Assembly: GCA_000320545.1 (NCBI GenBank)
Contig: ADNK01002292.1
Location: forward strand, 1-48,442
Source of the DNA: Bigelowiella natans CCMP2755
Taxonomy: Eukaryota > Protista > Cercozoa
DNA length: 48,442 bases
Direction: 5' to 3'
In this document: piece by piece, positions 6,878-35,813 of the stretch
How the letters are laid out: the number at the start of each line of letters is the position of its first letter
How positions within the stretch are numbered: position 1 is the first letter of the stretch
Position numbers and translations under genes: made by a program
Notes under the pieces: model-generated
What the model was told of the DNA's origin: nothing
What the model saw: the letters and a program-made list of their open reading frames with translations, nothing else
Databases searched by the model: none

Positions 6878-9273
6878 AAGACGGCAGCTAGTTCGGGAAC
6901 GAAGAGATGGGGATGTTTTCCCATTGGCAACTGTGCCAAGAAAGGAGTTCGCAGACGGCCTGGAATCCCATGCCAAAAAGAGGGAAATCAGGAATTCGAG
7001 GCACAGAATAGCAAAAAATGAGCTTTTAACGTCGGGAAGTTGAGGCGATTTCTTGGGAATTAAGATAGAAATTCTGCATAATTTCATGGGGAATTCGTAT
7101 TGACGACAACGATGGGAGCATGCTGTAAAGTAAGATCATAATTGCCTGGACGACTATCTCCTTTCCCCCCCCAAAGAGACCAACACACGTTTGTGTTGGA
7201 AGGAGATTCTCCAGCAGATTGCAAGGTGGTCTTGGGGCGATAAGAATCATCATTTGCGTCACCCAATTGAAATTTCGTAAAAAGTAGCTACACTAGTGAA
7301 TGGGGTATGATGATAATTCTCTTGCAGGAGTTCGGAAATCTCAAAGGGGGGTTTTCTTTCGGAGGTGGAGAGTGTGGATCAACATCCACACAATAGAACC
7401 ATCGTAGCATATCAGGGATCATAACAACACCATGGAGAAAATTAAAAAGCATCCGCAGTTTATACTCCCAGCAGGAGTCAAGGTGAAAAGAGAGAGGGGG
7501 AGAGCACATGTTGAGAGTTTCACTTTTACTGCTAAGAAGGAATACTTTGTTGGAGCTAACAAGGCATTTTCAGGTTGCGATAAACCATGCATCTACTCGG
7601 AAGGAAAGAGGCAAGAGCCACACAGTGTTCCACATCACAGTAATGGTAATAAGGCGATTCTGCATGCGGCATTCGATGGATTAATCCTGATTATCTACAA
7701 TTTACTTAATACAGGGAGACCGAATCAATTGGGTGACGTTTCGAAGATTCTCACAATTCGATCGTTGTCATAAACAACTTGTTCAGAGGTTATTACGTAG
7801 AATCTGGTTTCATATATTTGCTTCATACCACAATTTTTCACTGTCAGATTCCCGGACATTGCTTTACCAAGCCTACCACCAAAGAAGTGGATAGGATCTC
7901 TTGTGACCGAATTCGTAGACAAACGGAGATCGGACTTGCAAAAGGTATGAGTCATTAAGCACGTATTAGTGTCTTCGTCATTATTCATCGCGCCCTCCCA
8001 TGTATCATAGTACCTGCAAGACTTAATCGAAATCCCGGATGTTCGGAGAACTGCAGAATTTAGTGCTTTCCTAGGAAAATCAGAGGTAATTATATAGACC
8101 ATAGAAATTCCTACCATCGTGCCAATACCCTAATTCGGTTTGAATAACTATGGCGAGGATGATAGTTTGTGTGTGTGTGTGTGTGTGTGAATGGTACGTT
8201 GTTTCTCAGTATGCGCAGTGTCCCAGAACACCGGACCTCCCTCCCCGTGTTGAGCAAACTATTCCGCCTAAACTGAGTACGTATATATTTGCTACTATTT
8301 CGGCTGTTGTGATCTATCCCATCATGTCACGCAGAACATCAACATTCTCATCGACATTCTCCTCCACAGACGGAATGGACGCTGTCAACCTCCGGGCTCA
8401 ATTTCGCTCATTCACATTACAGGTGCTATCATAGAGGGATTACAAGTATTTTGATAAGCAGTATCTTGATGGGGGGGGGAGGGGGCTGTTTGTATAATTC
8501 TCCCGAGATGAGATACCTTCCCAATTAGTTCATTACGCACCTACACCTTGTATTATTTCCTGTTAGATGCAAGCCAAAATCAAGCAGCTGGAGCAGCGTT
8601 GTGCCGTTGCGGAGCACACGGCGAACACCGCACTTCGTATAGCCAACTTAGCAGCAAGCTCCTTAACGCAAGAATCAAAACGAAGGTCCGTAGTCAACAG
8701 TGTGAGTGAAGAGAGGGGAGGGGGTGGTGACAGGCATTTCATGAAGATAGTAAACATACGATATTCGCATTGGTGGAAAGGACTCCAGGAACGTGAATAC
8801 AAGTTGTTTCGAGAGGCGGCCATTCTCCCTTTCGAATGCCCTAGTCTCATTACATATTTGGTCAATTACTGTTCGTGTTGAGACCCTCATGAACATATAC
8901 GCTTCACTCTAAAATTGGCGCTATTTACTAAACAATCAGACTGCAGAGAAAGGTTCGTGACGAAATGAAGAATCTTGTCCACAAAAAGGACTCAAGCAGC
9001 TTAGGCCATAGGCAGCAAAGGGAAAAGCTTGTTCATCGGAAGGTAGTAGCAGTAATAGTAGTGGTAGTGGTCGCGGTACCTTGCTCCCTCTGTTACGATG
9101 TGATTGTGAGGGTTATTCAAATTTTGGTGTTGCGCAGCCATTCGCCGAATCTCCTTCTTCTTCTTCTTCTTCATCTTCTTCTTCTTCTTCTGTTTCTGTG
9201 ATTAACCGCTACCCCGTTGTTCATTTGGACAGTTCTCAGCTGACAACATCCGGGAGCGGGGAAAAACAGAAGT
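6878..9273 (+). CDS. PX (Phox homology) domain module, possibly preceded by a PH-like segment and followed by coiled coil; probably the 5' part of the nucleotidyltransferase gene
   Basis: Spliced exons 7715-7788, 7848-7944 and 8011-8085 give GDRINWVTFRRFSQFDRCHKQLVQR/FPDIALPSLPPKKWIGSLVTEFVDKRRSDLQK/YLQDLIEIPDVRRTAEFSAFLG, carrying the PX motifs RR(Y/F)SxF, LPxLPPK and RRxxLQxYL. Upstream HTFVLEGDSPADCK resembles a PH C-terminal strand-helix (weak). MQAKIKQLEQRCAVAE is coiled-coil-like. Confidence 0.78.
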
Positions 9274-26800: not shown

Positions 26801-27078
26801 AGATTGTCGTGTCAGTAGTCTGCGGCTTGGTCGCAATTGCAGGATTTGCAGTTGCAGGGCTTTATATTTGGAGGAAGCGACAGCTTGCGCTTCTGAATAG
26901 TGCGGCCGAAGACATCGGGGAAGGAGATATAAACCTGGATCACAATCAGCCATATCATGATAGAAACTTGAAAGATCTCTTGGAGCTAGATGATGCCAGC
27001 TCTATAGCCACAGGGATGACGATGCCCTCTGATATTGGATCGGCTGTTGAAGGACGTCGTTCTCAAGAAATTGGGTAA
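23877..27078 (+). CDS. Type I membrane glycoprotein: signal peptide, His-rich segment, P/T mucin-like stalks, LamG/concanavalin A-like domain, single TM, short cytoplasmic tail
   Basis: Signal peptide MGSLKAWLFLAFTLTLPITA. PT repeats DPPTPAPTQYPSTSPT and VPTPDPTVTPTTSEP. Spliced YIPEFRLSFELKL..DYTNIMHMT..SRPA/VWTYPNSTQLHIRMS..GCDPPQEIPLNQWTNVSI..VRVYFSDPWFDPASAEV is a ConA-like beta-sandwich pattern. TM IVVSVVCGLVAIAGFAVAGLYIW is followed by RKR; stop at 27076-27078. Confidence 0.8.
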
Positions 27079-27099: not shown

Positions 27100-28030
27100 A
27101 TATTAGCGAAATTAACTAGGAGAGATAATAGTGATTACATCGCGATAGATAAGCATGTAATGTGTAGCTAAATCTTTGAGCTTCCATATGTGATATGTAG
27201 AAATCTGTTAATTGTTTTAACATGGATATATTCCCACATCTGGACATGTACTGGTGTAGTAATTTACACGCGCAGGCTGCGAATCTAGCTTAGCTGGCTA
27301 GCTAGGGGTGAAGGCTTTATACCCAAGCGTGCAGCTATGCATTAGAGATTTCATCACATCTAGACAGACGTGTGATGGCAGCACAACTAGACAATCAGAC
27401 AGTAAACAATTCTAGAATTTCAACTTCTAGAGCTTTGATAGCTAGATAGCTAGTCTAGAGTGTCTAGGTGCGCTAGTCTAGTAGTGTGCCTGTGTGATGC
27501 ACTAGCTAGCTAGCTAGGTAGTGCATGCGAACCTCTACTAGAGTAGCTAGCTAGCTAGCTAGCCCAGCAGGCTAGCAGGATCTCTTGCACACTTGAGATC
27601 TGAAGATGCCTTCTTGCCTTCTGTGGCCTTTTAGCCTTGCTAGCTTGTCAAGATGTCTTGTTGATTTAGTGATTGCTAGTAGATTGCTTTGTGATACAAT
27701 GAACCGATCTAGCAATGTCTGCGATGGACAGGCTAGCAAGTGTCGCACTCTAGCTAGCTAGTGCTAGCATTTGATGATCTAGATGGTGCTTTCTAGCTTT
27801 CTAGCTTTTCAGCAAGTTAGCAAGCCATTCTAGCATGCTAATGAGCTATCTACTCTAGTTTGGAAACTTGAACAACACATTGACTTAGCACTGAGCACTA
27901 CTAGACTAGCTAGTGGAGCAGACTAGCAGAGTAGGGAGGCAAGAGCGTCTTTTCTATTTGTTCGCTCCATCCAATAAACAGCATCTCATTTCAGGACAAA
28001 TTATGCATGTGCTGTAGCTGCATGCTTAGC
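27100..28030. mobile_element. CTAG-rich intergenic block; probable hypermutated repeat relic
   Basis: Runs such as gctagatagctagtctag and ctagctagctagctag; no ORF; lies between convergent genes. Confidence 0.4.
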
Positions 28031-28193
28031 TAGACTTTATCAATCAATAAGGAACAACAGTAGCAATATAAATGGTGGTATCAAAATATGAGCCGCCTTT
28101 ACATTGTAAAGATAAGAAAACAAGTAACAATTCCATTCACTCGGCGCAATATAGGTTGCAGGTACGGAAATTGTACCGCGTCCTCGTAACGAA

Positions 28194-31100
28194 TTATATA
28201 TGAAATGAATTTTTCTTTTCGTGGCTTGCAGCTCTAGTGAAAATCTGTTTCTTTTCAAAAGATGGGTAGACCCAACGCAAAGTTGTGAAACCGTGGACAA
28301 AATCTTCTAGGTTTTCATAAACATCAACAACATCCTTTAGATGTAATTGAAAACCTTCAGGTTGGGCTTCGAGGAGTAGATGAACCACTTCTCCACCTTC
28401 TGAAACGTACGCCAAGCTTAGATCTCCTGCATAGTTTGCGCTAAGTCGCAATGCAAATGTTCCAGGTGCTGTTGTTCGAAGATAAGCGTGGAAGATTTGT
28501 TTGTTGTGCGAAATTCCGTAGATCTTGGTTACAGGATCTACGGCATCCCATAGATGTAAAATTTTTTTTACTGTTCCGTGGAAAGGAAGGTACCACATGC
28601 TCCACCAACTTTGTATTTTGCAAAGTTCGATTTCGCCTTTCAAAATTAAGGAACAAAAATTAAGGAACATATTAACAAAACACCAAAAAGGATCAGTGTA
28701 GCTGCACCTGCGGAAGAAGTTGTAATTCTTCTGATTATTTCTTCTAGATCATGTGAGGAGAGACCTCTGGAAGCATGTGTCGTCGATGTGAAATGTTGAT
28801 TAAGATGGAGACAAAAATCACTCGCAGTTGTTACACCTTCATATATAACATGGGCAAGGTTTCAATTTAGAGCATATACAATATCAGTTTTGTGAATACG
28901 TTAAAACTAAAGGGTACCTGTAGAAGATAACCCTTTCCAGAAAGACTCAAAACTCATCTCGCTTGGGCTCAGGTTTTGCGGTAGAATCTGAGTCGTTCAA
29001 AAAGACAGAAATTCACTCGCTAATTGCATTGAAATGGTTTATTTTGAATATTTGTAACACCTTTTCACAAGGCCTGTTAAGGCTCAAAAGTTTGACAGCA
29101 CCATCCAAAAGATGATACTGAAGGAGTTTCGCGACTCGACACACAATGCCTGGATAGCCTCGGCAGACATCTTTAATTATCGGATGATGACGAAGTAGAT
29201 GCAGTAGCTGGGCAGAAGTTAAAGTGCCTACATGTACGAGTTGCTAATCAGAAGTCATATTTTGTTAAGTCAAAGCTCTTACCATTGTCCGTGAGTTCCA
29301 TAGCCTGTATTGGGCGTGAAAGTTTCAGTAGTAATGAGACGGTGTCTTTGTCGTCCAGGGGCTTCAGCTCGATAGTTCGCTCTAGAATCTGGCTAGGCAA
29401 CGCTAGCAAATTACATACCTAATTCGTAACATTATTTCGCAGATTCTGGGAATACAGCCTTGCAAGCTTGCAAGTTTTATCTCTTCATAATGATTAGTTA
29501 TGCACCGGTATACAACTCGTAGTAAGGAGCTTTATGTGCGGGCATGTCTGTAGGAGCGATACGATATTGCGAACTAAACCCTTCTTCCATTCTGGATGGC
29601 GACTTTGAGCTAAAGCCTAAAATAAGATGTACTATAATCTGAACACAAGTCTCTTCATTTCATTTTTACATTACCTCATCAATCCTTGTGAAAATAACCA
29701 GAATATTCATTTTCTCAAGAGATTTCAAGAGCTTTTTGTTGTCTTTTGTGCTAGTTTTTACTTCGGCGTTGAGACCTACGACCTGAGCGATTTGAGAAAA
29801 TATCGTCCCATCCGAAGTTGGGTTAGCCATATCCAGCATGACCATCCCATCAGAAAAGTGGTTTCTCTGCAGCATATATCGACAAACAGCTGTCGCAGTT
29901 TCTGCCTTCCCGATTCCTATTATTTATGTCTCTATGTGCAACACGAAAAGGAGTCATAATTTATTTTGGTGACCTAACTTCCCAGTAATCGTTACGATAC
30001 GCGTTCTGGCGTCTCTAATAAACTTTATAGTTGACTGCATCTCCTGATTTCTAACGAACATGAAAATGTATAAAAATGATGGTAAGAATCAGATAGAATT
30101 CCAAGACCTTCCAACAAACTGCGGGGATAGAGATGGAAGATTGTGTGGTGGAAGCAACAATGTGTGATCAACAAGATCCCCCTTCGTAACCTAAGTAAGC
30201 CAAGAGGTCATTATGCCAAAGCATCATTTTTCCTCTATTTCTTCAATACCGAGCTGAATATCTTCACATCATGTTTCTCATCCTTTGGTAAAAGAAGAAA
30301 TTTCTCTGATTCCTTCCTGCCCATCTTTGAAGTTTCTTTCACAACCTGCGAATGTAAATATAGTTGATGGTCAACCAAAAATTGTTTGCGAATCACTTAC
30401 CACTTTTGCTATGTCAAACGCTTCCTTGATAGTGTGGTCATTCGTGACAGCTAAGTAAAACTAGCAACAACACAACGCCAAACTTATTTTTTTTTCAGAA
30501 ATAAATATATATGAGTCACCTGTTTGGTAAACGTAACAGCTGCGTGATCTTCCAAAGTCTCGTCGACTTGTACCGCGATTACGTGTTTCACCCCCGCTCG
30601 GACAAATGCATTTCCTGATACTTCAGAGTGGCATGCAGCTACAAAAACAAGGTCTACAGTCCTACAAGAGTTTCCAACGGCAAATAAATCGCGCAAAGCC
30701 TTCACTTTAAGTAAACGAGCAACCCCTGTGCCTAATTAAAAATTTTGTAAAGCACGGCGCATATATTTACACTTAATTATGATAAGTTTGGTATCTAAAT
30801 ATGAGAATATGAGCACATCATTACTGTCTTCAAAAACGAGATTCGATTTTTGTCCGTGTCCAGCGTAGTGTAAAACCTACAATCATGCTATAAGTATATA
30901 TTTCAAGGTAAACTTGAAAGTTCAGGAATGACCTTGCATCCCTCTGTGATAGCTTCTCTAAAGTTTACTACTCAATTATGGCGCTCAGTCAAGCATCAAA
31001 CTTTTTTTAGGTTTTCAAAACAAATAACAGTGTTTTTAGTCTCACTTGTTGTTGCGTGCATAGTGGCCACATGCAATGCCTTCTCGCTTCGGGAGAGTGC

Positions 31101-34100
31101 ATCTTTGACCACATTCCATTCTCTGCCAACGTTCAGCCTCTGTACAGCTTCATAGTAATATTATAAAATAGATAGAAAGTATAAATTGATATCAAATGAG
31201 AAGGCATAGGGGATAGCAGTAAAAATTGTAATTGGCGAAAGTTCTATGTATCTTACCCTGTCCTTGCTCGTCTATCAGTGGGTTTGAAGTCATGTGTAGA
31301 AAGTGATATCGCACTTTGGGCTTGTATATACGTTCCCCAACTGCCTCAGCTTCTTTGAGCATTAGATCTGTTAACTCATCATCTAATAGTTTTTTACATC
31401 TACTATCCTGAGTTCTGTATTGTTTCGAATCTGGATCATTAGAAGATCTAGGCATTGTCCCTGTTTTTTCTTTTTTTGCCGCACCGACCAGGCGGCCCTC
31501 CACTTCTTTCTCCTCAGCTCGGATGGGAAGGAATTTGTCCTGTGAATCCCCTTTAAAGGACTTATCCTTAAACGCTGGCATCGATCTTACAACACTAGGC
31601 TGAGTAAGTAGCAGAGATTCAGGCACCAATAACTACTGATATAGAACAAGGAACCTCCAGAATATACGAAGTTAATGACTGTCTGCTGCTGTTCGAGGAG
31701 TTATAGGCGTCCTGATTACCTTGACATATCAATTTATAATTTCAGCAATAACCCACACGAAAAGAAATTCAATATCATTAAGACTATCTCACTGTTGGAG
31801 CTGCTTGCATTGCCACCATTTTCAATGTTCTAGGGGGTCAGAGAGAGAGTTAGCACGCCGATCACATATTCAAATTATCATCGACCAGCGAAGCGTTCAC
31901 ATGCAAAAAACCGCCATATCGACCCAATGCTGCGTCAAATGCTTTAATTATTCGTTTCCTAATCATTAAGGTGTCCTTAAGAATGTATTCGATGAACGTC
32001 CTACAGAGTGAACTTACAAAGAAAACTTAAATACCTGTGCTTACGATCATCTGGTGAGCAGTACTGAAATTTGATATATCTGGAAACCACATCGAGTTGC
32101 TCGTGCAACTCTGATACAGATTCACCGCTGCTCGAATATGGTTTCTCACTCTTGCCATCGTAAAACTCTGATTTTAGTGCTACTCTTTTCTTTTCCAGCT
32201 TTCCGTTCAGACAGTCACAAACTTTAGAAGATGCCTTTAAATGAAAAACGTGCTGGGTTTTTTTTCCGATCGGGGTAGTATCGGACAGTCTAATTGGCAA
32301 AGAGATGGTTTGAGATTATTGTAAAGACAATTTGATATTATTACATAGATTTATTGCATATAATTGACCTGAGGACTCGAGAGAAGAACGGCTTGGCTAA
32401 TGGGTGCTTCACACACCGCGTAGGTTTGAAGTATCGAGTCCGATTGTAGTTGTAGTAGCAATCATAGTAAAACCTATTTGAAGAAGTAATTGTTTATTAC
32501 GAATCCTAGAAACAATTTTCTCCTGCACACCCATCTTCTAAACTTGTCATGTCCATGTCCTTCTTCCGGAATCCATGGAAATCACATTCTAAATTACAAC
32601 ATAAACCTTAGATGTGAACGTGGAGTGGTAAGAGAATCTATTACCTTCGATAACAACACAGTGATTCTTCACTGAAAGTAAAGGAATATCATCATTAATG
32701 AAGCAACTTTAATCATTATTGATCCTACCAGGGTAAATGCCTTTCTCAGGAAAGTGGAGTGATTGCTTAGCACTATATTCCATATTGCCCCATGCATGAC
32801 TGAACGCCTGGTTTATAAAGCATCCCTTTGAAACCAGTTAACACTCAGCATCTTTACAAATATTCAGGAACCTTGCAAATCAAGCAGAGAAGTGAATTTT
32901 TATTCGGAGTGCACTTGGTACAGTCACATATGCGCATGTGCCCTTTCGAGCACATAAATCCAGGATCCTTGTGTACAAAGAATAGTCAGGAGTACTTTTT
33001 ATGGTTATGGTAGAACTTACGTTTGTGAGCTTTCTGATATTATTACGTATAATCTCCGGCTTTACTTCGTCACCTTTCGAAGGAATAGATTTCTTGGCAC
33101 TATCGGGAAATAAAAATTGGAATTTTTGAATTACCATTCATGTTTAAAGTTGGTATGCCGTTGCTGTGCACAGGTTTTTTCAAATTTAACATAAAATCAA
33201 TGAATTCTTTTAATCTATGAGCGACTGCAGGCCATTCTCTTCTATTTTCACGCTTGTAGATAGACTCGCATTGCCCCATCAGGATACCAAGCACCTTCGC
33301 AGCGTCTGTTCATGAACATAATTACGGGACGATACTGCACATCTGACCCAGTCGTTGTTCGCACCATGGAAGAATCTCCAAACTTTTACTCTATTTAAAT
33401 CCCATTCTCTCATCAAATCCTAAATAAAACACCGGGTTTAATAAAATCACTTCAGTGTGATTAGTATTTCGTCACCTGAGCAAAATCACTCCATGGAATT
33501 TCAGCAGCGTCACTTCCTGCGATGCATTCCTACATTCCAATTGATCTCAGTTGTCCGTACATTTTCAATCGGTGTCTCTCCACCTTTATATTTGTGGCTT
33601 TCTTCTTCTTCCTTTTGCCTTTTCCTGCTCCATTAGATGGAGTCAAAGGCTTACCATTTTTACTGATTTGATACTGGCTACTGGGAGAAATATGTTTCCG
33701 TTTGGCAGAATATTTATCAGTCCGTGGTTGACATTGACTTGCACGAGGAGTGACTAAACAAGTTGCCATTTGAGGGTTTGATTGTTAATCTTATTATTGT
33801 AAGACAACCTGCAAATGACTGTTGTATTCTTTGCAAATACTTTCGTTGTCCCGTTGTAATTCCAGCCTAATTTAGGCAATTCTCATTCTCGTTTATGGTT
33901 GACAATACTAAACTTCGTTCCACAAACCTTAATCATCTCATCATCACTCCACCGTAGAAAAGTGTCACCGGTTTTACTCTCTCTCAGAATGATCTCAATA
34001 GTCTTTGACTTCAGGTTCCATCTGGCATAGTTTTGCTTCAACCATTCTATAAAATCTTCTTGAGAGAGAGCCTTAAACTCTTCAGCGGTCCTAATTTTAC

Positions 34101-34373
34101 ATCGCAAATAGAGCTTGGTGGCAAAAGTTGAATGATAATAAATCTAATACCACATCTTTGGTGCTAAAGTGTTGAGAGAGGTAGGCTCGGTGAACAAAGC
34201 AGCTGTGGGAGATGAAACCGCCCCCATTGCTGCAAACGCAAGTAACTTAATTTTGGGATCGAAAATCATTGCATCAACATCTTCTACCTTCAAACGACAA
34301 CGGTGGCGCATTCCTCAACCTCCCTGGCAAGTGACTAACAAGAAGATAATACCCATGAGCATTAAAATGTCTC

Positions 34374-34424
<51 letters not shown>

Positions 34425-34863
34425 CATATCTCCCTCCCTTGGGGTCATTCAAATGGTTCTAACTTCAACGTTGCTGGCAATGATATATTCGCGAAGCCTT
34501 CATTTGTGAGAATATCCATGGGTAGAGGAATAGATGGAAAGCCTTGCTGATCTAGCGGTAGATTTCCCGTCGAGTTCTTATAGTGCCTTAGAAGCGTAAT
34601 AAAATGTTGGAAACCAATGCTCAAAGTTTTGATGAAATCGTACATCAATCTAGTTTTCATATCTCCATCAATTAATGAAGCCATATCGCCAACAGCTGCT
34701 GCTTGGACACTTCTTCCGGCTGAACTTGAATCATCTAACCCACGATGAATCTCATTGCCATTTTCTGTGGCATTCCCGGTGTAGAATCCATCCTTGTGCA
34801 TCTGGCGGGACGGACTTCTCTTCTGTTTTTCAGCCACTCTTTCCAAACGTGATAACTGGAAAC
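28194..34863 (-). CDS. Multidomain NLR-like protein: SAM - Zn-finger-like - CHAT (caspase HetF-like) protease - NB-ARC/STAND NTPase - STAT-type linker + SH2; about 35 introns; 5' end unresolved (may extend to about 35310 or 35798)
   Basis: From hand-spliced, phase-consistent exons. SAM: FKALSQEDFIEWLKQ..GDTFLRWSDDEMIK/AGITTGQRKYLQRI (34090-33809). CHAT: FLHMTSNPL..LNVGREW..VLHYAGHG (His 30856-30858)..VFVAACHS (Cys 30631-30633)..AGVKHVIAV..DHAAVTFTKQ/FYLAV. NB-ARC: HNLPSLSPQFVGR..VTITGKL/GIGKAETA..ILVIFTRIDE..IKLLTTSC..IELKPL..CRGYPGIV. STAT linker/SH2: RGLSSHDLEEI..WWSMWYLPF..ILHLWD..IYGISHNK..PGTFALRLS..GDLSLAYV (last exon 28636-28194). Confidence 0.85.
34377..34424. repeat. (CT)n microsatellite, intronic
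   Basis: Direct reading of the sequence. Confidence 0.95.
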
Positions 34864-35813
34864 CTGTGTATTAAATACGACGAGACCACTAAAACGACAT
34901 CAATGCTAAGAAATGCGATGGGTTTTGCTGTGTTAGATCAACATGATTGTCAAGACTCTGGCTGAGGAAACTCGCAACAACAAAGCCTCGATTATCGAGC
35001 GTGGATTGTCTTTGGTTTCAAGATGATTGTGTCAGTCTTGGCTGTCGCAGAGATGAACGAGGTCCTCTCACCGCAACGTTTATAAATCGCAAGGAAACGC
35101 AGAAGCTTTTTGGTAGGTAATTTTTCTGGGAAACATTGTGAATTTGTACTGCATCTCACCTAAAGAGCTTTATTTTGACATTTACGACATCTCTCATAAG
35201 CTGTCGCATTGAGAAAGCATGCGATAAACGCTGCACCAGCAATTCACAAACAAAATCTAGCACGAGGCGGTTTCTTGTCCGCATGCGCATCTGGGAAAGA
35301 AGAAACAAAGAGAGACATCCGCAAAAAATGATGTGAATCAAAAAAGTGCCATTTTTCATTTTAGTTTGGGTTTTGAGGAAAGCAACGAAAACTACGCCCC
35401 ATCAGGTGATTTTACCCAATATCTGAAAGCCATATGTTTTAGTCATTTTCGCCTGTGTTTTATACAAAAGCGCGCTCAAAACCGAATAATTAATCCGAAA
35501 CGCTATGGCTTTCCCCCTAATTTCCATGCTTATTTGGTTGTCACATGAGGTTGATTTGAGAGCGTTTCTCTCTCCTCTTACTTATGTGTAATAGTCTGTC
35601 GAGATATGCCGGGGGATTCTCAACAAAAAATGAATTTATAATTGTCGTTATGTAAGGATTATCAGGTATTTTCAAGATTCAGCTTCAATTTCGGATGCAT
35701 TGAACTGAATATAGATTGAATCAATATTTGTCGCCCATGGAACCTGGATAAGAAGAATTAGCGCTGCACCCTGCCCCTGATTCGTTCTCCGTGGGCATTC
35801 CCTATTTTAAAAA

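What the first reader, a model, noticed from the sequence alone, without database searches (positions are those of the whole stretch)
28194..34863. NLR-like caspase switch with an SH2 sensor: SAM - CHAT protease - NB-ARC - STAT-linker/SH2 in one polypeptide
Seen (after manual splicing, phases consistent from SAM to stop apart from a few ambiguous junctions at 31.7-33.3 kb): an intact CHAT dyad (HYAGHG, AACHS) directly followed by an NB-ARC-type STAND module (LP…FVGR, Walker A, Walker B region, LLTTS, GxP) and, where NLRs have LRR/TPR/WD40 repeats, a STAT-type linker plus SH2. Established: effector-STAND-sensor is the layout of NLRs, Apaf-1 and bacterial Avs proteins; CHAT proteases are caspase/separase relatives coupled to STAND/TPR proteins and gasdermin or CRISPR effectors in prokaryotes; SH2 reads phosphotyrosine. 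Inference: a protease activated by oligomerisation in response to tyrosine phosphorylation, i.e. a candidate innate-immunity or regulated-cell-death system in a unicellular eukaryote. I know of no characterised protein with this combination. It is invisible to ORF-level annotation.
Basis: partly seen in the sequence, partly recalled or inferred. Interest (0 to 1): 0.92.

Follow-up and report, generated by a model that had tools for sequence, protein, structure and literature searches.

The report
Caspase-like STAND protein with SH2 tail
A spliced, expressed gene of the alga Bigelowiella natans fuses a caspase-like CHAT protease, an NLR-type switch ATPase and a STAT-type phosphotyrosine-reading SH2 domain in one protein, and belongs to an undescribed family found in several protist lineages.

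Summary
The core observation holds. RNA contigs give a 27-exon minus-strand gene (ATG 33279, stop 28194-28196, 1116 aa). It encodes an N-terminal extension starting MGQCES, a CHAT domain with an intact His/Cys dyad, a STAND NTPase, a STAT-type linker and an SH2 domain.

The SAM part does not hold. It lies in a separate upstream 201-aa ORF that ends at 33530-33532, and three in-frame stops precede the CHAT gene's ATG.

The genome is Bigelowiella natans. It carries two further paralogs with the same domain order (C3470, C1779) and a sister group of CHAT-NB-ARC-TPR genes.

The same architecture occurs in other chlorarachniophytes, in Mataza, in Saprolegnia diclina (a "hypothetical protein") and in marine metatranscriptomes. 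I found no paper describing it.

A structure model of a family member matches SAVED-CHAT (Z 25), CED-4/Apaf-1 (Z 16) and Dictyostelium STATa linker+SH2 (Z 16.6). The window's own last exon folds as a STAT-like SH2.

The window copy is divergent:
- Both Mg-coordinating Walker residues are lost (GKA, T-R-I-D-E).
- It lacks the Tyr motif and the acidic tail seen in relatives.
- It is nevertheless under purifying selection (dN/dS 0.16).

A phosphotyrosine-gated, NLR-like protease switch is plausible but untested.

The parts
28194..33279 (-). Coding sequence of the CHAT-STAND-linker-SH2 gene: 27 exons, 26 GT-AG introns of 47-123 nt, 1116 aa. Exons (+ coordinates): 33135-33279, 33021-33073, 32872-32967, 32729-32807, 32645-32671, 32531-32588, 32369-32473, 32035-32289, 31886-31958, 31793-31829, 31655-31719, 31257-31599, 31046-31147, 30933-30967, 30825-30876, 30520-30731, 30401-30460, 30250-30345, 30108-30190, 29974-30050, 29675-29916, 29506-29616, 29283-29418, 29061-29227, 28918-28987, 28708-28836, 28194-28636.
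   Evidence: 15 introns are listed directly. The other 11 were inferred from contig record lengths, depth-bin fractions and frame. Total exonic length equals the X3 contig span. P0161 and P0001 confirm aa 400-1116.
31324..33279 (-). N-terminal extension (aa 1-423) that relatives lack. It starts MGQCES (an N-myristoylation-type motif, inferred) and continues with a Cys/His-rich stretch (aa 67-190) and low-complexity Ser/Asn/Lys-rich stretches.
   Evidence: No Pfam match for any exon. No similarity to the paralog. Splicing here rests on RNA contig lengths and depth only.
30259..31323 (-). CHAT (caspase-fold, clan CD) protease domain, aa 424-628. Catalytic His498 is codon 30856-30858 and Cys542 is codon 30631-30633.
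   Evidence: P0161 (identical over this part) scores Pfam CHAT E 7.1e-10, 39.2 bits against a cut-off of 24. The dyad is conserved across the family alignment. Homolog model against SAVED-CHAT 8tl0: Z 25.3, rmsd 2.2.
29061..30151 (-). STAND NTPase (NBD plus helical lid with the GxP motif), aa 645-903. Walker A is GKLGIGKA (Lys688 codon 29906-29908; Ala689 replaces Ser/Thr). Walker B is VIFTRIDE (Thr761 codon 29687-29689 replaces Asp).
   Evidence: Pfam NB-ARC scores 23.5 bits (equal to the cut-off) in ortholog P0001 and 19.4 bits in P0161. NACHT scores above cut-off in paralogs and homologs. Homolog model against CED-4 Z 16.0 and Apaf-1 Z 15.2. The degenerate motifs are shared with P0001. NBD dN/dS is 0.11.
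28533..28987 (-). STAT-type helical linker region, aa 904-1004. It is preceded by LSPSEMSFESFW, where relatives carry a Y-x-P motif.
   Evidence: Homolog model 544-753 aligns to Dictyostelium STATa 490-707 (linker+SH2), Z 16.6. Pfam STAT_linker is only weak (E 0.023 and 0.008). Motif comparison.
28242..28532 (-). SH2 domain, aa 1005-1101. The betaB5 Arg1033 is codon 28446-28448. The STAT-like VYPSFEKKQIF end motif is present.
   Evidence: Pfam SH2 E 0.0027, 18.2 bits, below the cut-off of 21. Profile against PDB: STATa 1.1e-6 with 2 sequences and 7e-16 with the family. AF2 model of this exon has pLDDT 90.4. It matches STAT6 at Z 12.6 and CRK SH2 at Z 12.3, rmsd 1.6.
33530..34311 (-). Separate upstream ORF of 201 aa with a SAM-like middle part. 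Exons are 34151-34311, 33928-34090, 33809-33866 and 33476-33753, with the stop at 33530-33532. It is not part of the CHAT protein.
   Evidence: One RNA contig (X3) joins it to the CHAT gene. In X1 and X2 the contigs break at about 33188 and 33306, and the depths differ.

Best explanation
What is shown. The window encodes one 1116-aa protein. It belongs to a previously undescribed eukaryotic family of NLR-like proteins with the order CHAT caspase-like protease, STAND NTPase, STAT-type linker, SH2. The protease has an intact dyad. The SH2 keeps its phosphate-binding Arg/Ser. The gene is spliced, expressed and under purifying selection.

What is inferred for the family. The SH2 module sits where sister paralogs carry TPR sensor repeats. 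I propose that it couples tyrosine phosphorylation to assembly. Binding of a phosphotyrosine ligand would promote STAND-type oligomerisation and bring the CHAT domains together. In many relatives that ligand could be a Y-x-P motif in the disordered segment just upstream of the linker, which would allow STAT-like reciprocal binding. Proximity would switch the CHAT domains on, as in apoptosomes and SAVED-CHAT filaments.

What is inferred for this copy. It is a specialised derivative that:
- has lost both Mg-coordinating Walker residues;
- has Leu in place of the Tyr of the Y-x-P motif;
- lacks the acidic C-terminal tail;
- has gained a 420-aa N-terminal extension with a myristoylation-type start.

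It most likely acts as a phosphotyrosine-reading, hydrolysis-deficient, possibly membrane-anchored partner or regulator of the canonical paralogs, while still carrying a competent protease.
For: - Gene model and expression: spliced RNA contigs. 20 of the 24 listed runs, from 8 studies, hold part of the stretch, 11 of them at least half of its words (shares 0.36-0.54), about the exonic fraction. The frame is continuous, and P0161 and P0001 agree with the model.
- Domains: CHAT 39.2 bits. NB-ARC/NACHT. SH2/STAT at sequence level and at fold level.
- Conservation: paralogs on C3470 and C1779 are collinear. At least 13 cluster representatives show the same order, from Partenskyella, Norrisiella, Amorphochlora, Mataza, Saprolegnia and metatranscriptomes.
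- Sensor position: the SH2-type genes form a clade (100/100) apart from the CHAT-NB-ARC-TPR genes of the same genome.
- Module behaviour: the same linker-SH2 module is fused to RING-B-box and to a kinase.
- Y-x-P motif: its density is 0.80 per 100 aa in the 80 aa taken before the linker domain (the stretch that holds its FW start) and 0.14 elsewhere.
- Kinases: at least 148 PK_Tyr_Ser-Thr-type matches in the genome.
- Selection: dN/dS is 0.16 overall and 0.11 over the degenerate NBD.
Against: - No biochemical evidence exists for phosphotyrosine binding, oligomerisation or proteolysis.
- Pfam SH2 and NB-ARC scores for this copy are at or below their cut-offs.
- Only one weak classical PTP match was found, and no dedicated tyrosine kinase was shown.
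- The Y-x-P motif appears in only part of the family, and the count is small and redundant (7 of 14).
- The N-terminal 400 aa rest on inferred splice sites and have no recognised fold.
- The start codon and myristoylation are inferred.
- The window protein is a long branch, so its placement in the tree is unsure.
Confidence: 0.45

Rival explanations
1. The SH2 is a target-recruitment module rather than the activating sensor. As in SOCS or Cbl, it would bring phosphotyrosine-marked proteins to the attached effector. Here the CHAT protease would cleave them to terminate or rewire signalling. The STAND part would respond to a different cue or merely scaffold.
For: The same linker-SH2 module is attached to an E3-type RING-B-box (P0019) and to a kinase (P0012/P0159). 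That is typical of a portable targeting module. The window copy keeps the protease dyad and SH2 but not the NTPase Mg ligands.
Against: In sister genes the same position holds TPR repeats, which are the usual STAND sensor. The canonical paralogs keep intact Walker motifs, which suggests that regulated assembly matters.
Confidence: 0.25
2. The SH2 does not read phosphotyrosine. It would bind phospho-Ser/Thr (as in SPT6), an acidic peptide such as the family's own [DE]3-x-P-[HST] tail, or an unmodified partner. The system would then be unrelated to tyrosine phosphorylation.
For: The genome shows few SH2 loci, one weak PTP match and no demonstrated dedicated tyrosine kinase. Many relatives end in a conserved acidic tail without Tyr.
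Against: The closest matches are STAT SH2 domains, which are true phosphotyrosine readers, including Dictyostelium STATa from an organism without classical tyrosine kinases. Arg betaB5 and the following Ser are invariant in 17 sequences. TKL-type kinases are abundant.
Confidence: 0.15
3. An alternative splice would join the SAM-like exon in frame to the CHAT-STAND-SH2 body.
For: One RNA contig (X3, 5460 nt) runs from the SAM-like ORF into the CHAT gene. One search counted 31 joints, of which my models explain 29, so two unseen joints could be alternative.
Against: Exon 33476-33753 has stops in all three frames, and exon 33133-33419 has three stops in the CHAT frame before ATG 33279. X1 and X2 contigs break between the two ORFs, and their depths differ. 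Neither the paralogs nor the homologs have a SAM domain.
Confidence: 0.05

Closest known systems
Apaf-1 / CED-4 apoptosomes (NB-ARC STAND proteins that activate caspases)
   Same: The STAND NTPase fold is shared (CED-4 Z 16.0, Apaf-1 Z 15.2). The logic is the same: a caspase-fold protease is controlled by an oligomerising NTPase.
   Different: Here the protease is fused in cis and is a CHAT domain, not a CARD-recruited caspase. The C-terminal module is linker-SH2 instead of WD40. This copy lacks the Walker A Ser/Thr and the Walker B Asp.
CHAT/caspase-STAND-TPR or -WD40 proteins of bacteria, and the CHAT-NB-ARC-TPR genes of this same genome (C180, C771, C590, C1213)
   Same: The N-to-C order protease, 'LLLP' segment, 'FVGR' and P-loop NTPase is the same, and the CHAT domains are homologous at 38-39% identity.
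   Different: The TPR repeats are replaced by a STAT-type linker-SH2. The two groups are separated by a long branch.
SAVED-CHAT (PDB 8TL0) and TPR-CHAT/Csx29 of type III CRISPR systems
   Same: This is the best structural match of the protease domain (Z 25.3, rmsd 2.2, 196 residues). From the entry title and my own knowledge, that CHAT protease is switched on by ligand-induced filament formation.
   Different: The sensor there is a SAVED domain that binds cyclic oligoadenylate. There is no STAND NTPase and no SH2, and the system is prokaryotic.
STAT transcription factors (Dictyostelium STATa 1UUR, STAT1/3/5/6) and plant STAT-type linker-SH2 proteins
   Same: The linker plus SH2 unit matches at sequence level (E 7e-16) and at fold level (Z 16.6). 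The GTFxLRxS motif and the LYPxxxK..F end motif are present.
   Different: There is no coiled-coil or DNA-binding domain and no C-terminal phosphotyrosine tail. In relatives a candidate Tyr motif lies upstream of the linker instead. The module is attached to a protease-NTPase.

Membership tests
CHAT domain (Pfam PF12770; clan CD caspase-fold proteases) | Match to the family profile above the curated cut-off | tested here: met
   P0161, identical to window aa 400-765, scores 39.2 bits against a cut-off of 24 (E 7.1e-10). A single window exon alone scores only E 0.055.
CHAT domain (Pfam PF12770; clan CD caspase-fold proteases) | Catalytic His (in GHG) followed by catalytic Cys (in AC-x-S) | tested here: met
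   His498 in HYAGHG and Cys542 in AACHS. Both are conserved in all aligned family members.
CHAT domain (Pfam PF12770; clan CD caspase-fold proteases) | Caspase/CHAT fold | tested here: met
   Tested on homolog P0005, not on the window protein itself: 8tl0_A Z 25.3, rmsd 2.2, 196 aligned.
STAND NTPases (NB-ARC PF00931 / NACHT PF05729) | Profile match above cut-off | tested here: inconclusive
   Window lineage: NB-ARC scores 23.5 bits in P0001 (equal to the cut-off) and 19.4 bits in P0161. Paralogs and homologs: NACHT scores 29-48 bits and NB-ARC up to 29.6 bits. The fold matches CED-4/Apaf-1/plant NLRs at Z 15-16. It is a STAND NTPase, but the subfamily is ambiguous.
STAND NTPases (NB-ARC PF00931 / NACHT PF05729) | Canonical Walker A (GxxxxGK[ST]) and Walker B (hhhhD) | tested here: not met
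   The window has GKLGIGKA-E and VIF-T-RIDE, and so does ortholog P0001. The C3470 paralog and the other family members have GIGKT and LLVMDGLD.
NLR-type tripartite architecture (effector - NOD - sensor) | N-terminal effector, central STAND, C-terminal ligand-binding domain in one polypeptide | tested here: met
   One ORF across RNA-supported exons. The C-terminal domain is SH2, not LRR/TPR/WD40, so it is NLR-like by layout only.
SH2 domain (PF00017), STAT subtype | Profile match above cut-off | tested here: inconclusive
   The window exon scores 18.2 bits against a cut-off of 21. Homologs score up to 38 bits. The family profile hits PDB STATs at E 7e-16.
SH2 domain (PF00017), STAT subtype | SH2 fold with the betaB5 Arg of the phosphate pocket | tested here: met
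   The AF2 model of the window exon has pLDDT 90.4. It matches CRK SH2 at Z 12.3, rmsd 1.6, and STAT6 at Z 12.6 including the preceding helix. Arg1033 and Ser1035 are invariant in 17 sequences.
SH2 domain (PF00017), STAT subtype | Phosphotyrosine-dependent ligand binding | not testable with these tools
   Needs peptide-binding assays.
STAT transcription factors | Coiled-coil and DNA-binding domains upstream of the linker-SH2, and a C-terminal Tyr phosphorylation site | tested here: not met
   The region upstream of the linker is CHAT plus NTPase. The protein ends 15 residues after the SH2 with no Tyr in the tail. It is not a STAT.
   It is a separate ORF with its own stop at 33530-33532, and three in-frame stops precede ATG 33279. 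SAM_KSR1 scores only E 0.06.

The most novel reading that the evidence does not exclude
Rhizarian and stramenopile protists possess a STAT-like phosphotyrosine pathway that ends in a caspase-like protease held on an NLR-type scaffold ('SH2-NLRs') rather than in transcription. Reciprocal pTyr(Y-x-P)-SH2 binding would nucleate the assembly. The window gene would be a lipid-anchored, NTPase-dead member that docks onto phosphorylated paralogs to place or restrain the death/immune protease at membranes.
Probability: 0.2. Interest if true: 0.85.

Novelty: new variant of a known kind. Interest (0 to 1): 0.72.

Why it matters
NLR-like STAND proteins are known to read ligands through LRR, TPR or WD40 repeats. 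An SH2 domain in that position would link phosphotyrosine signalling directly to a caspase-fold protease.

It would do so in lineages (Rhizaria, oomycetes) where neither phosphotyrosine signalling nor regulated cell death is understood.

The finding also widens the known uses of the ancient STAT-type linker-SH2 module. The family offers natural contrasts for experiments: canonical versus Walker-degenerate copies, and copies with and without the Tyr motif.

The family already sits in public databases as hypothetical or mis-modelled genes, so it is easy to overlook.

Tried and rejected
- **Single exons against Pfam.** Only sub-threshold hits came back, and nothing for the N-terminal exons. The B-box-like Cys/His pattern was not supported.
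- **The spliced protein could not be submitted.** Pfam, AF2 and the homology tools take no typed long sequence. I therefore used exons by reference and the database proteins P0161 (identical over aa 400-765) and P0001 (85% ortholog) as proxies. The N-terminal 400 aa remain unfolded and unsearched.
- **First DFS with strict depth bins and open frame.** It found no solution. This exposed that the SAM exons are in another ORF and that junction shifts had to be tolerated.
- **SAM-like exon against PDB sequences.** No SAM match.
- **Gasdermin Pfam search in the genome.** No match, and the control did not ring either, so this is uninformative.
- **Classical PTP search.** One weak hit, which is not evidence of absence in an intron-rich genome.
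- **Word-indexed homolog searches.** They were capped at 8000 candidates and returned few members. They did not list the window's own annotated protein.
- **Literature searches.** No description of the architecture was found. The eLife 2021 paper (PMC8195603) mentions SH2 only among the C-terminal domains of animal TRADD-N proteins.
Full report
**Observation**

The region holds a minus-strand, intron-rich gene. I laid three assembled public runs and one raw RNA run on 28150-34149. This gave 31 joints, and all 15 listed ones read CT..AC on the + strand, which is GT..AG for a minus-strand gene. One 5460-nt contig (X3) covers the whole stretch. Of the 24 listed runs, 20 (from 8 studies) hold part of the stretch, with shares of 0.36-0.54, and 11 hold at least half of its sampled words, which is roughly the exonic fraction. 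The gene is therefore transcribed and spliced.

Joining the 15 listed introns gives one open frame of 660 codons that contains HYAGHG, AACHS, LP..FVGR, a P-loop and LLTTS. I solved the remaining introns from three constraints: the record coordinates of the contigs, the depth fraction of each 200-nt bin, and the reading frame. The resulting 27 exons add up exactly to the contig span (3813 nt between 28150 and 33753).

Two database proteins check the model independently. P0161, an MMETSP transcript product, is identical to model residues 400-765. P0001, a metatranscriptome fragment, is 85% identical over residues 521-1116 without gaps at the exon junctions.

**The SAM part fails**

In the CHAT frame, the contiguous RNA exon 33133-33419 carries three stops upstream of the first ATG (33279, MGQCES). 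Exon 33476-33753 has stops in all three frames.

The SAM-like exon (33928-34090) belongs to a separate 201-aa ORF running from ATG 34311 to the stop at 33530-33532. Its SAM assignment is weak (SAM_KSR1 E 0.06, no PDB match).

X3 joins both ORFs on one contig. In X1 and X2 the contigs break at about 33188 and 33306, and the mean depths differ (161.9 against 85.9, and 39.1 against 26.3). This fits two overlapping or read-through transcription units. Two of the 31 joints are not accounted for by my models, so a minor isoform cannot be excluded.

**Domains of the window protein**

| Part | Residues | Main evidence |
|---|---|---|
| CHAT protease | 424-628 | P0161 scores CHAT 39.2 bits against a cut-off of 24; His498 and Cys542 conserved across the family |
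| STAND NTPase | 645-903 | NB-ARC 23.5 bits in P0001, equal to the cut-off; 19.4 bits in the truncated P0161 |
| STAT-type linker | 904-1004 | Homolog model aligns to the STATa linker+SH2 |
| SH2 | 1005-1101 | Pfam 18.2 bits, below the cut-off of 21; profile and fold matches below |

- **SH2, sequence level.** A two-sequence profile hits Dictyostelium STATa at E 1.1e-6. The 17-sequence family profile hits STATa at 7e-16 and STAT6, STAT5, STAT1 and STAT3 at about 1e-14 to 1e-12. These alignments start in the linker.
- **SH2, fold level.** An AF2 model of the window's own last exon (pLDDT 90.4) matches STAT6 (Z 12.6, 126 residues, including the leading helix) and plain SH2 domains (CRK, Z 12.3, rmsd 1.6). 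Arg1033 and Ser1035 of the phosphate pocket are invariant in the family.
- **N-terminal extension.** Residues 1-423 match no family and are absent from relatives. The MGQCES start fits the N-myristoylation consensus. That is my inference.

**The family**

The genome is Bigelowiella natans. The JGI Bigna1 protein 139177 (P0163) matches contig C1779 exon by exon at 100% identity.

Two further paralogs have the same order:
- **C3470:** CHAT E 3e-11, NACHT E 4.7e-12, weak STAT_linker and SH2 hits. It is collinear with the window protein at 42%, 26% and 28% identity in the CHAT, NTPase and SH2 parts.
- **C1779:** it carries two linker-SH2 units, like Norrisiella P0151. The JGI model of this paralog is chimeric and truncated.

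A full-database HMM search with the SH2 profile found 170 proteins. At least 13 cluster representatives have CHAT, a P-loop NTPase and SH2 in this order. They come from:
- Partenskyella;
- Norrisiella (strain BC52);
- Amorphochlora;
- Mataza;
- Saprolegnia diclina (SDRG_08366, a "hypothetical protein");
- an unnamed NCBI assembly, where the gene is intronless;
- marine metatranscriptomes.

The same linker-SH2 module is also fused to RING-B-box (P0019) and to a protein kinase (P0012/P0159).

An AF2 model of P0005 (pLDDT 84.5) matches three known folds:

| Match | Z | Model range |
|---|---|---|
| SAVED-CHAT (8tl0) | 25.3 | 10-226 |
| CED-4 / Apaf-1 | 16.0 / 15.2 | 234-539 / 234-487 |
| STATa linker+SH2 (1uur) | 16.6 | 544-753 |

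The genome also holds at least six CHAT-NB-ARC-TPR genes. In these the TPR repeats sit where the SH2 sits here. In a tree of the CHAT-NTPase core, the SH2-type genes form a 100/100 clade apart from them, and the window protein is a long branch.

**What is special about this copy**

- Ser/Thr of Walker A is Ala689 and Asp of Walker B is Thr761. Both are Mg ligands. The ortholog P0001 shares both changes, while every other member is canonical.
- Several relatives, including the C3470 paralog and the SH2-kinase, carry a Y-x-P motif in the disordered segment before the linker domain. Its density is 0.80 per 100 aa in the 80 aa taken before the linker domain (the stretch that holds its FW start) against 0.14 elsewhere. 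The window lineage has LSPS there.
- Many relatives end in an acidic [DE]3-x-P-[HST] tail. The window protein does not.
- Despite this, dN/dS against P0001 is 0.16 overall and 0.11 over the NTPase. The copy is therefore functional, not decaying.

**Mechanism**

Shown: the architecture, the catalytic dyad, an SH2 with an intact phosphate pocket, expression, and conservation.

Inferred for the family: phosphotyrosine binding by the SH2 promotes STAND-type assembly and proximity activation of the CHAT protease. The ligand may be the family's own Y-x-P segment, bound reciprocally as in STAT dimers. The analogies are apoptosomes and SAVED-CHAT filaments.

Inferred for the window copy: it is a hydrolysis-deficient, possibly myristoylated reader or adaptor that still carries a competent protease.

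The genome has many TKL-type kinases (at least 148 PK_Tyr_Ser-Thr matches) but only one weak PTP match. As in Dictyostelium, tyrosine phosphorylation would have to come from dual-specificity kinases.

The rivals are:
- the SH2 serves as a substrate-recruiting module;
- the SH2 binds a ligand other than phosphotyrosine;
- a SAM-fused isoform exists.

**Novelty**

Seven full-text searches found no description of a CHAT-STAND-SH2 protein. The only paper that mentions both SH2 domains and STAND NTPases concerns animal TRADD-N proteins. The parts are all known and the layout is NLR-like, so I class this as a new variant of a known kind.

Another (s1-417717) describes the linker-SH2 of this same gene. 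Both agree with what I found.

**Limits**

- The spliced protein could not be given to Pfam, AF2 or the homology tools, so the N-terminal 400 residues are unclassified.
- Eleven of the 26 coding introns are inferred, not read directly from the output.
- All functional statements are untested.

Noticed in passing
window 33530-34311 (-) and intron 33420-33475: A 201-aa SAM-like ORF lies directly upstream on the same strand. One RNA contig joins it to the CHAT gene, with a spliced intron between its stop codon and the next gene's ATG. This suggests read-through, overlapping UTRs or a bicistronic mRNA.
   Followed up: partly
window 34318-34870 (-): A (GA)n microsatellite lies at about 34318-34440. 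Upstream of it is a further 141-codon open frame (34448-34870) that ends in a stop at 34445-34447. Its relation to the SAM-like ORF's transcript is unresolved, because only about 647 nt of contig lie beyond 34091.
   Followed up: no
G000:C1779 (L006:1-9900) and protein P0163: This is the third CHAT-NTPase paralog, with two linker-SH2 units. The public JGI model (Bigna1 139177) fuses a glycosyltransferase-8-like N-terminus to the CHAT domain and stops after the P-loop, so it is probably a chimeric, truncated gene model.
   Followed up: partly
L002 (C180), L003 (C771), L004 (C590); also C1213: A family of CHAT-NB-ARC genes with long runs of near-identical kinesin-light-chain-type TPR units. The C180 and C590 copies are almost identical, which points to recent duplication. 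In C590 one 1876-codon open frame runs from NB-ARC-TPR into a second CHAT domain.
   Followed up: partly
proteins P0003-P0040: Many linker-SH2 proteins of different architectures end in a conserved acidic tail, [DE][DE][DE]-x-P-[H/S/T], at the very C-terminus. Its function is unknown, and it is absent from the window protein.
   Followed up: no
proteins P0019, P0012/P0159: The same STAT-type linker-SH2 module is fused to RING plus two B-boxes (TRIM-like) and to a Ser/Thr/Tyr-type protein kinase in unidentified marine eukaryotes.
   Followed up: partly
window 27372-28193: The RNA contigs continue about 780 nt past the stop codon. A + strand ORF with a transmembrane segment ends at 27078. This indicates either a long 3' UTR or overlap with a convergent gene. 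Raw 60-nt RNA reads (X21) pile up at 28150-28349, as expected for a 3'-biased library.
   Followed up: no
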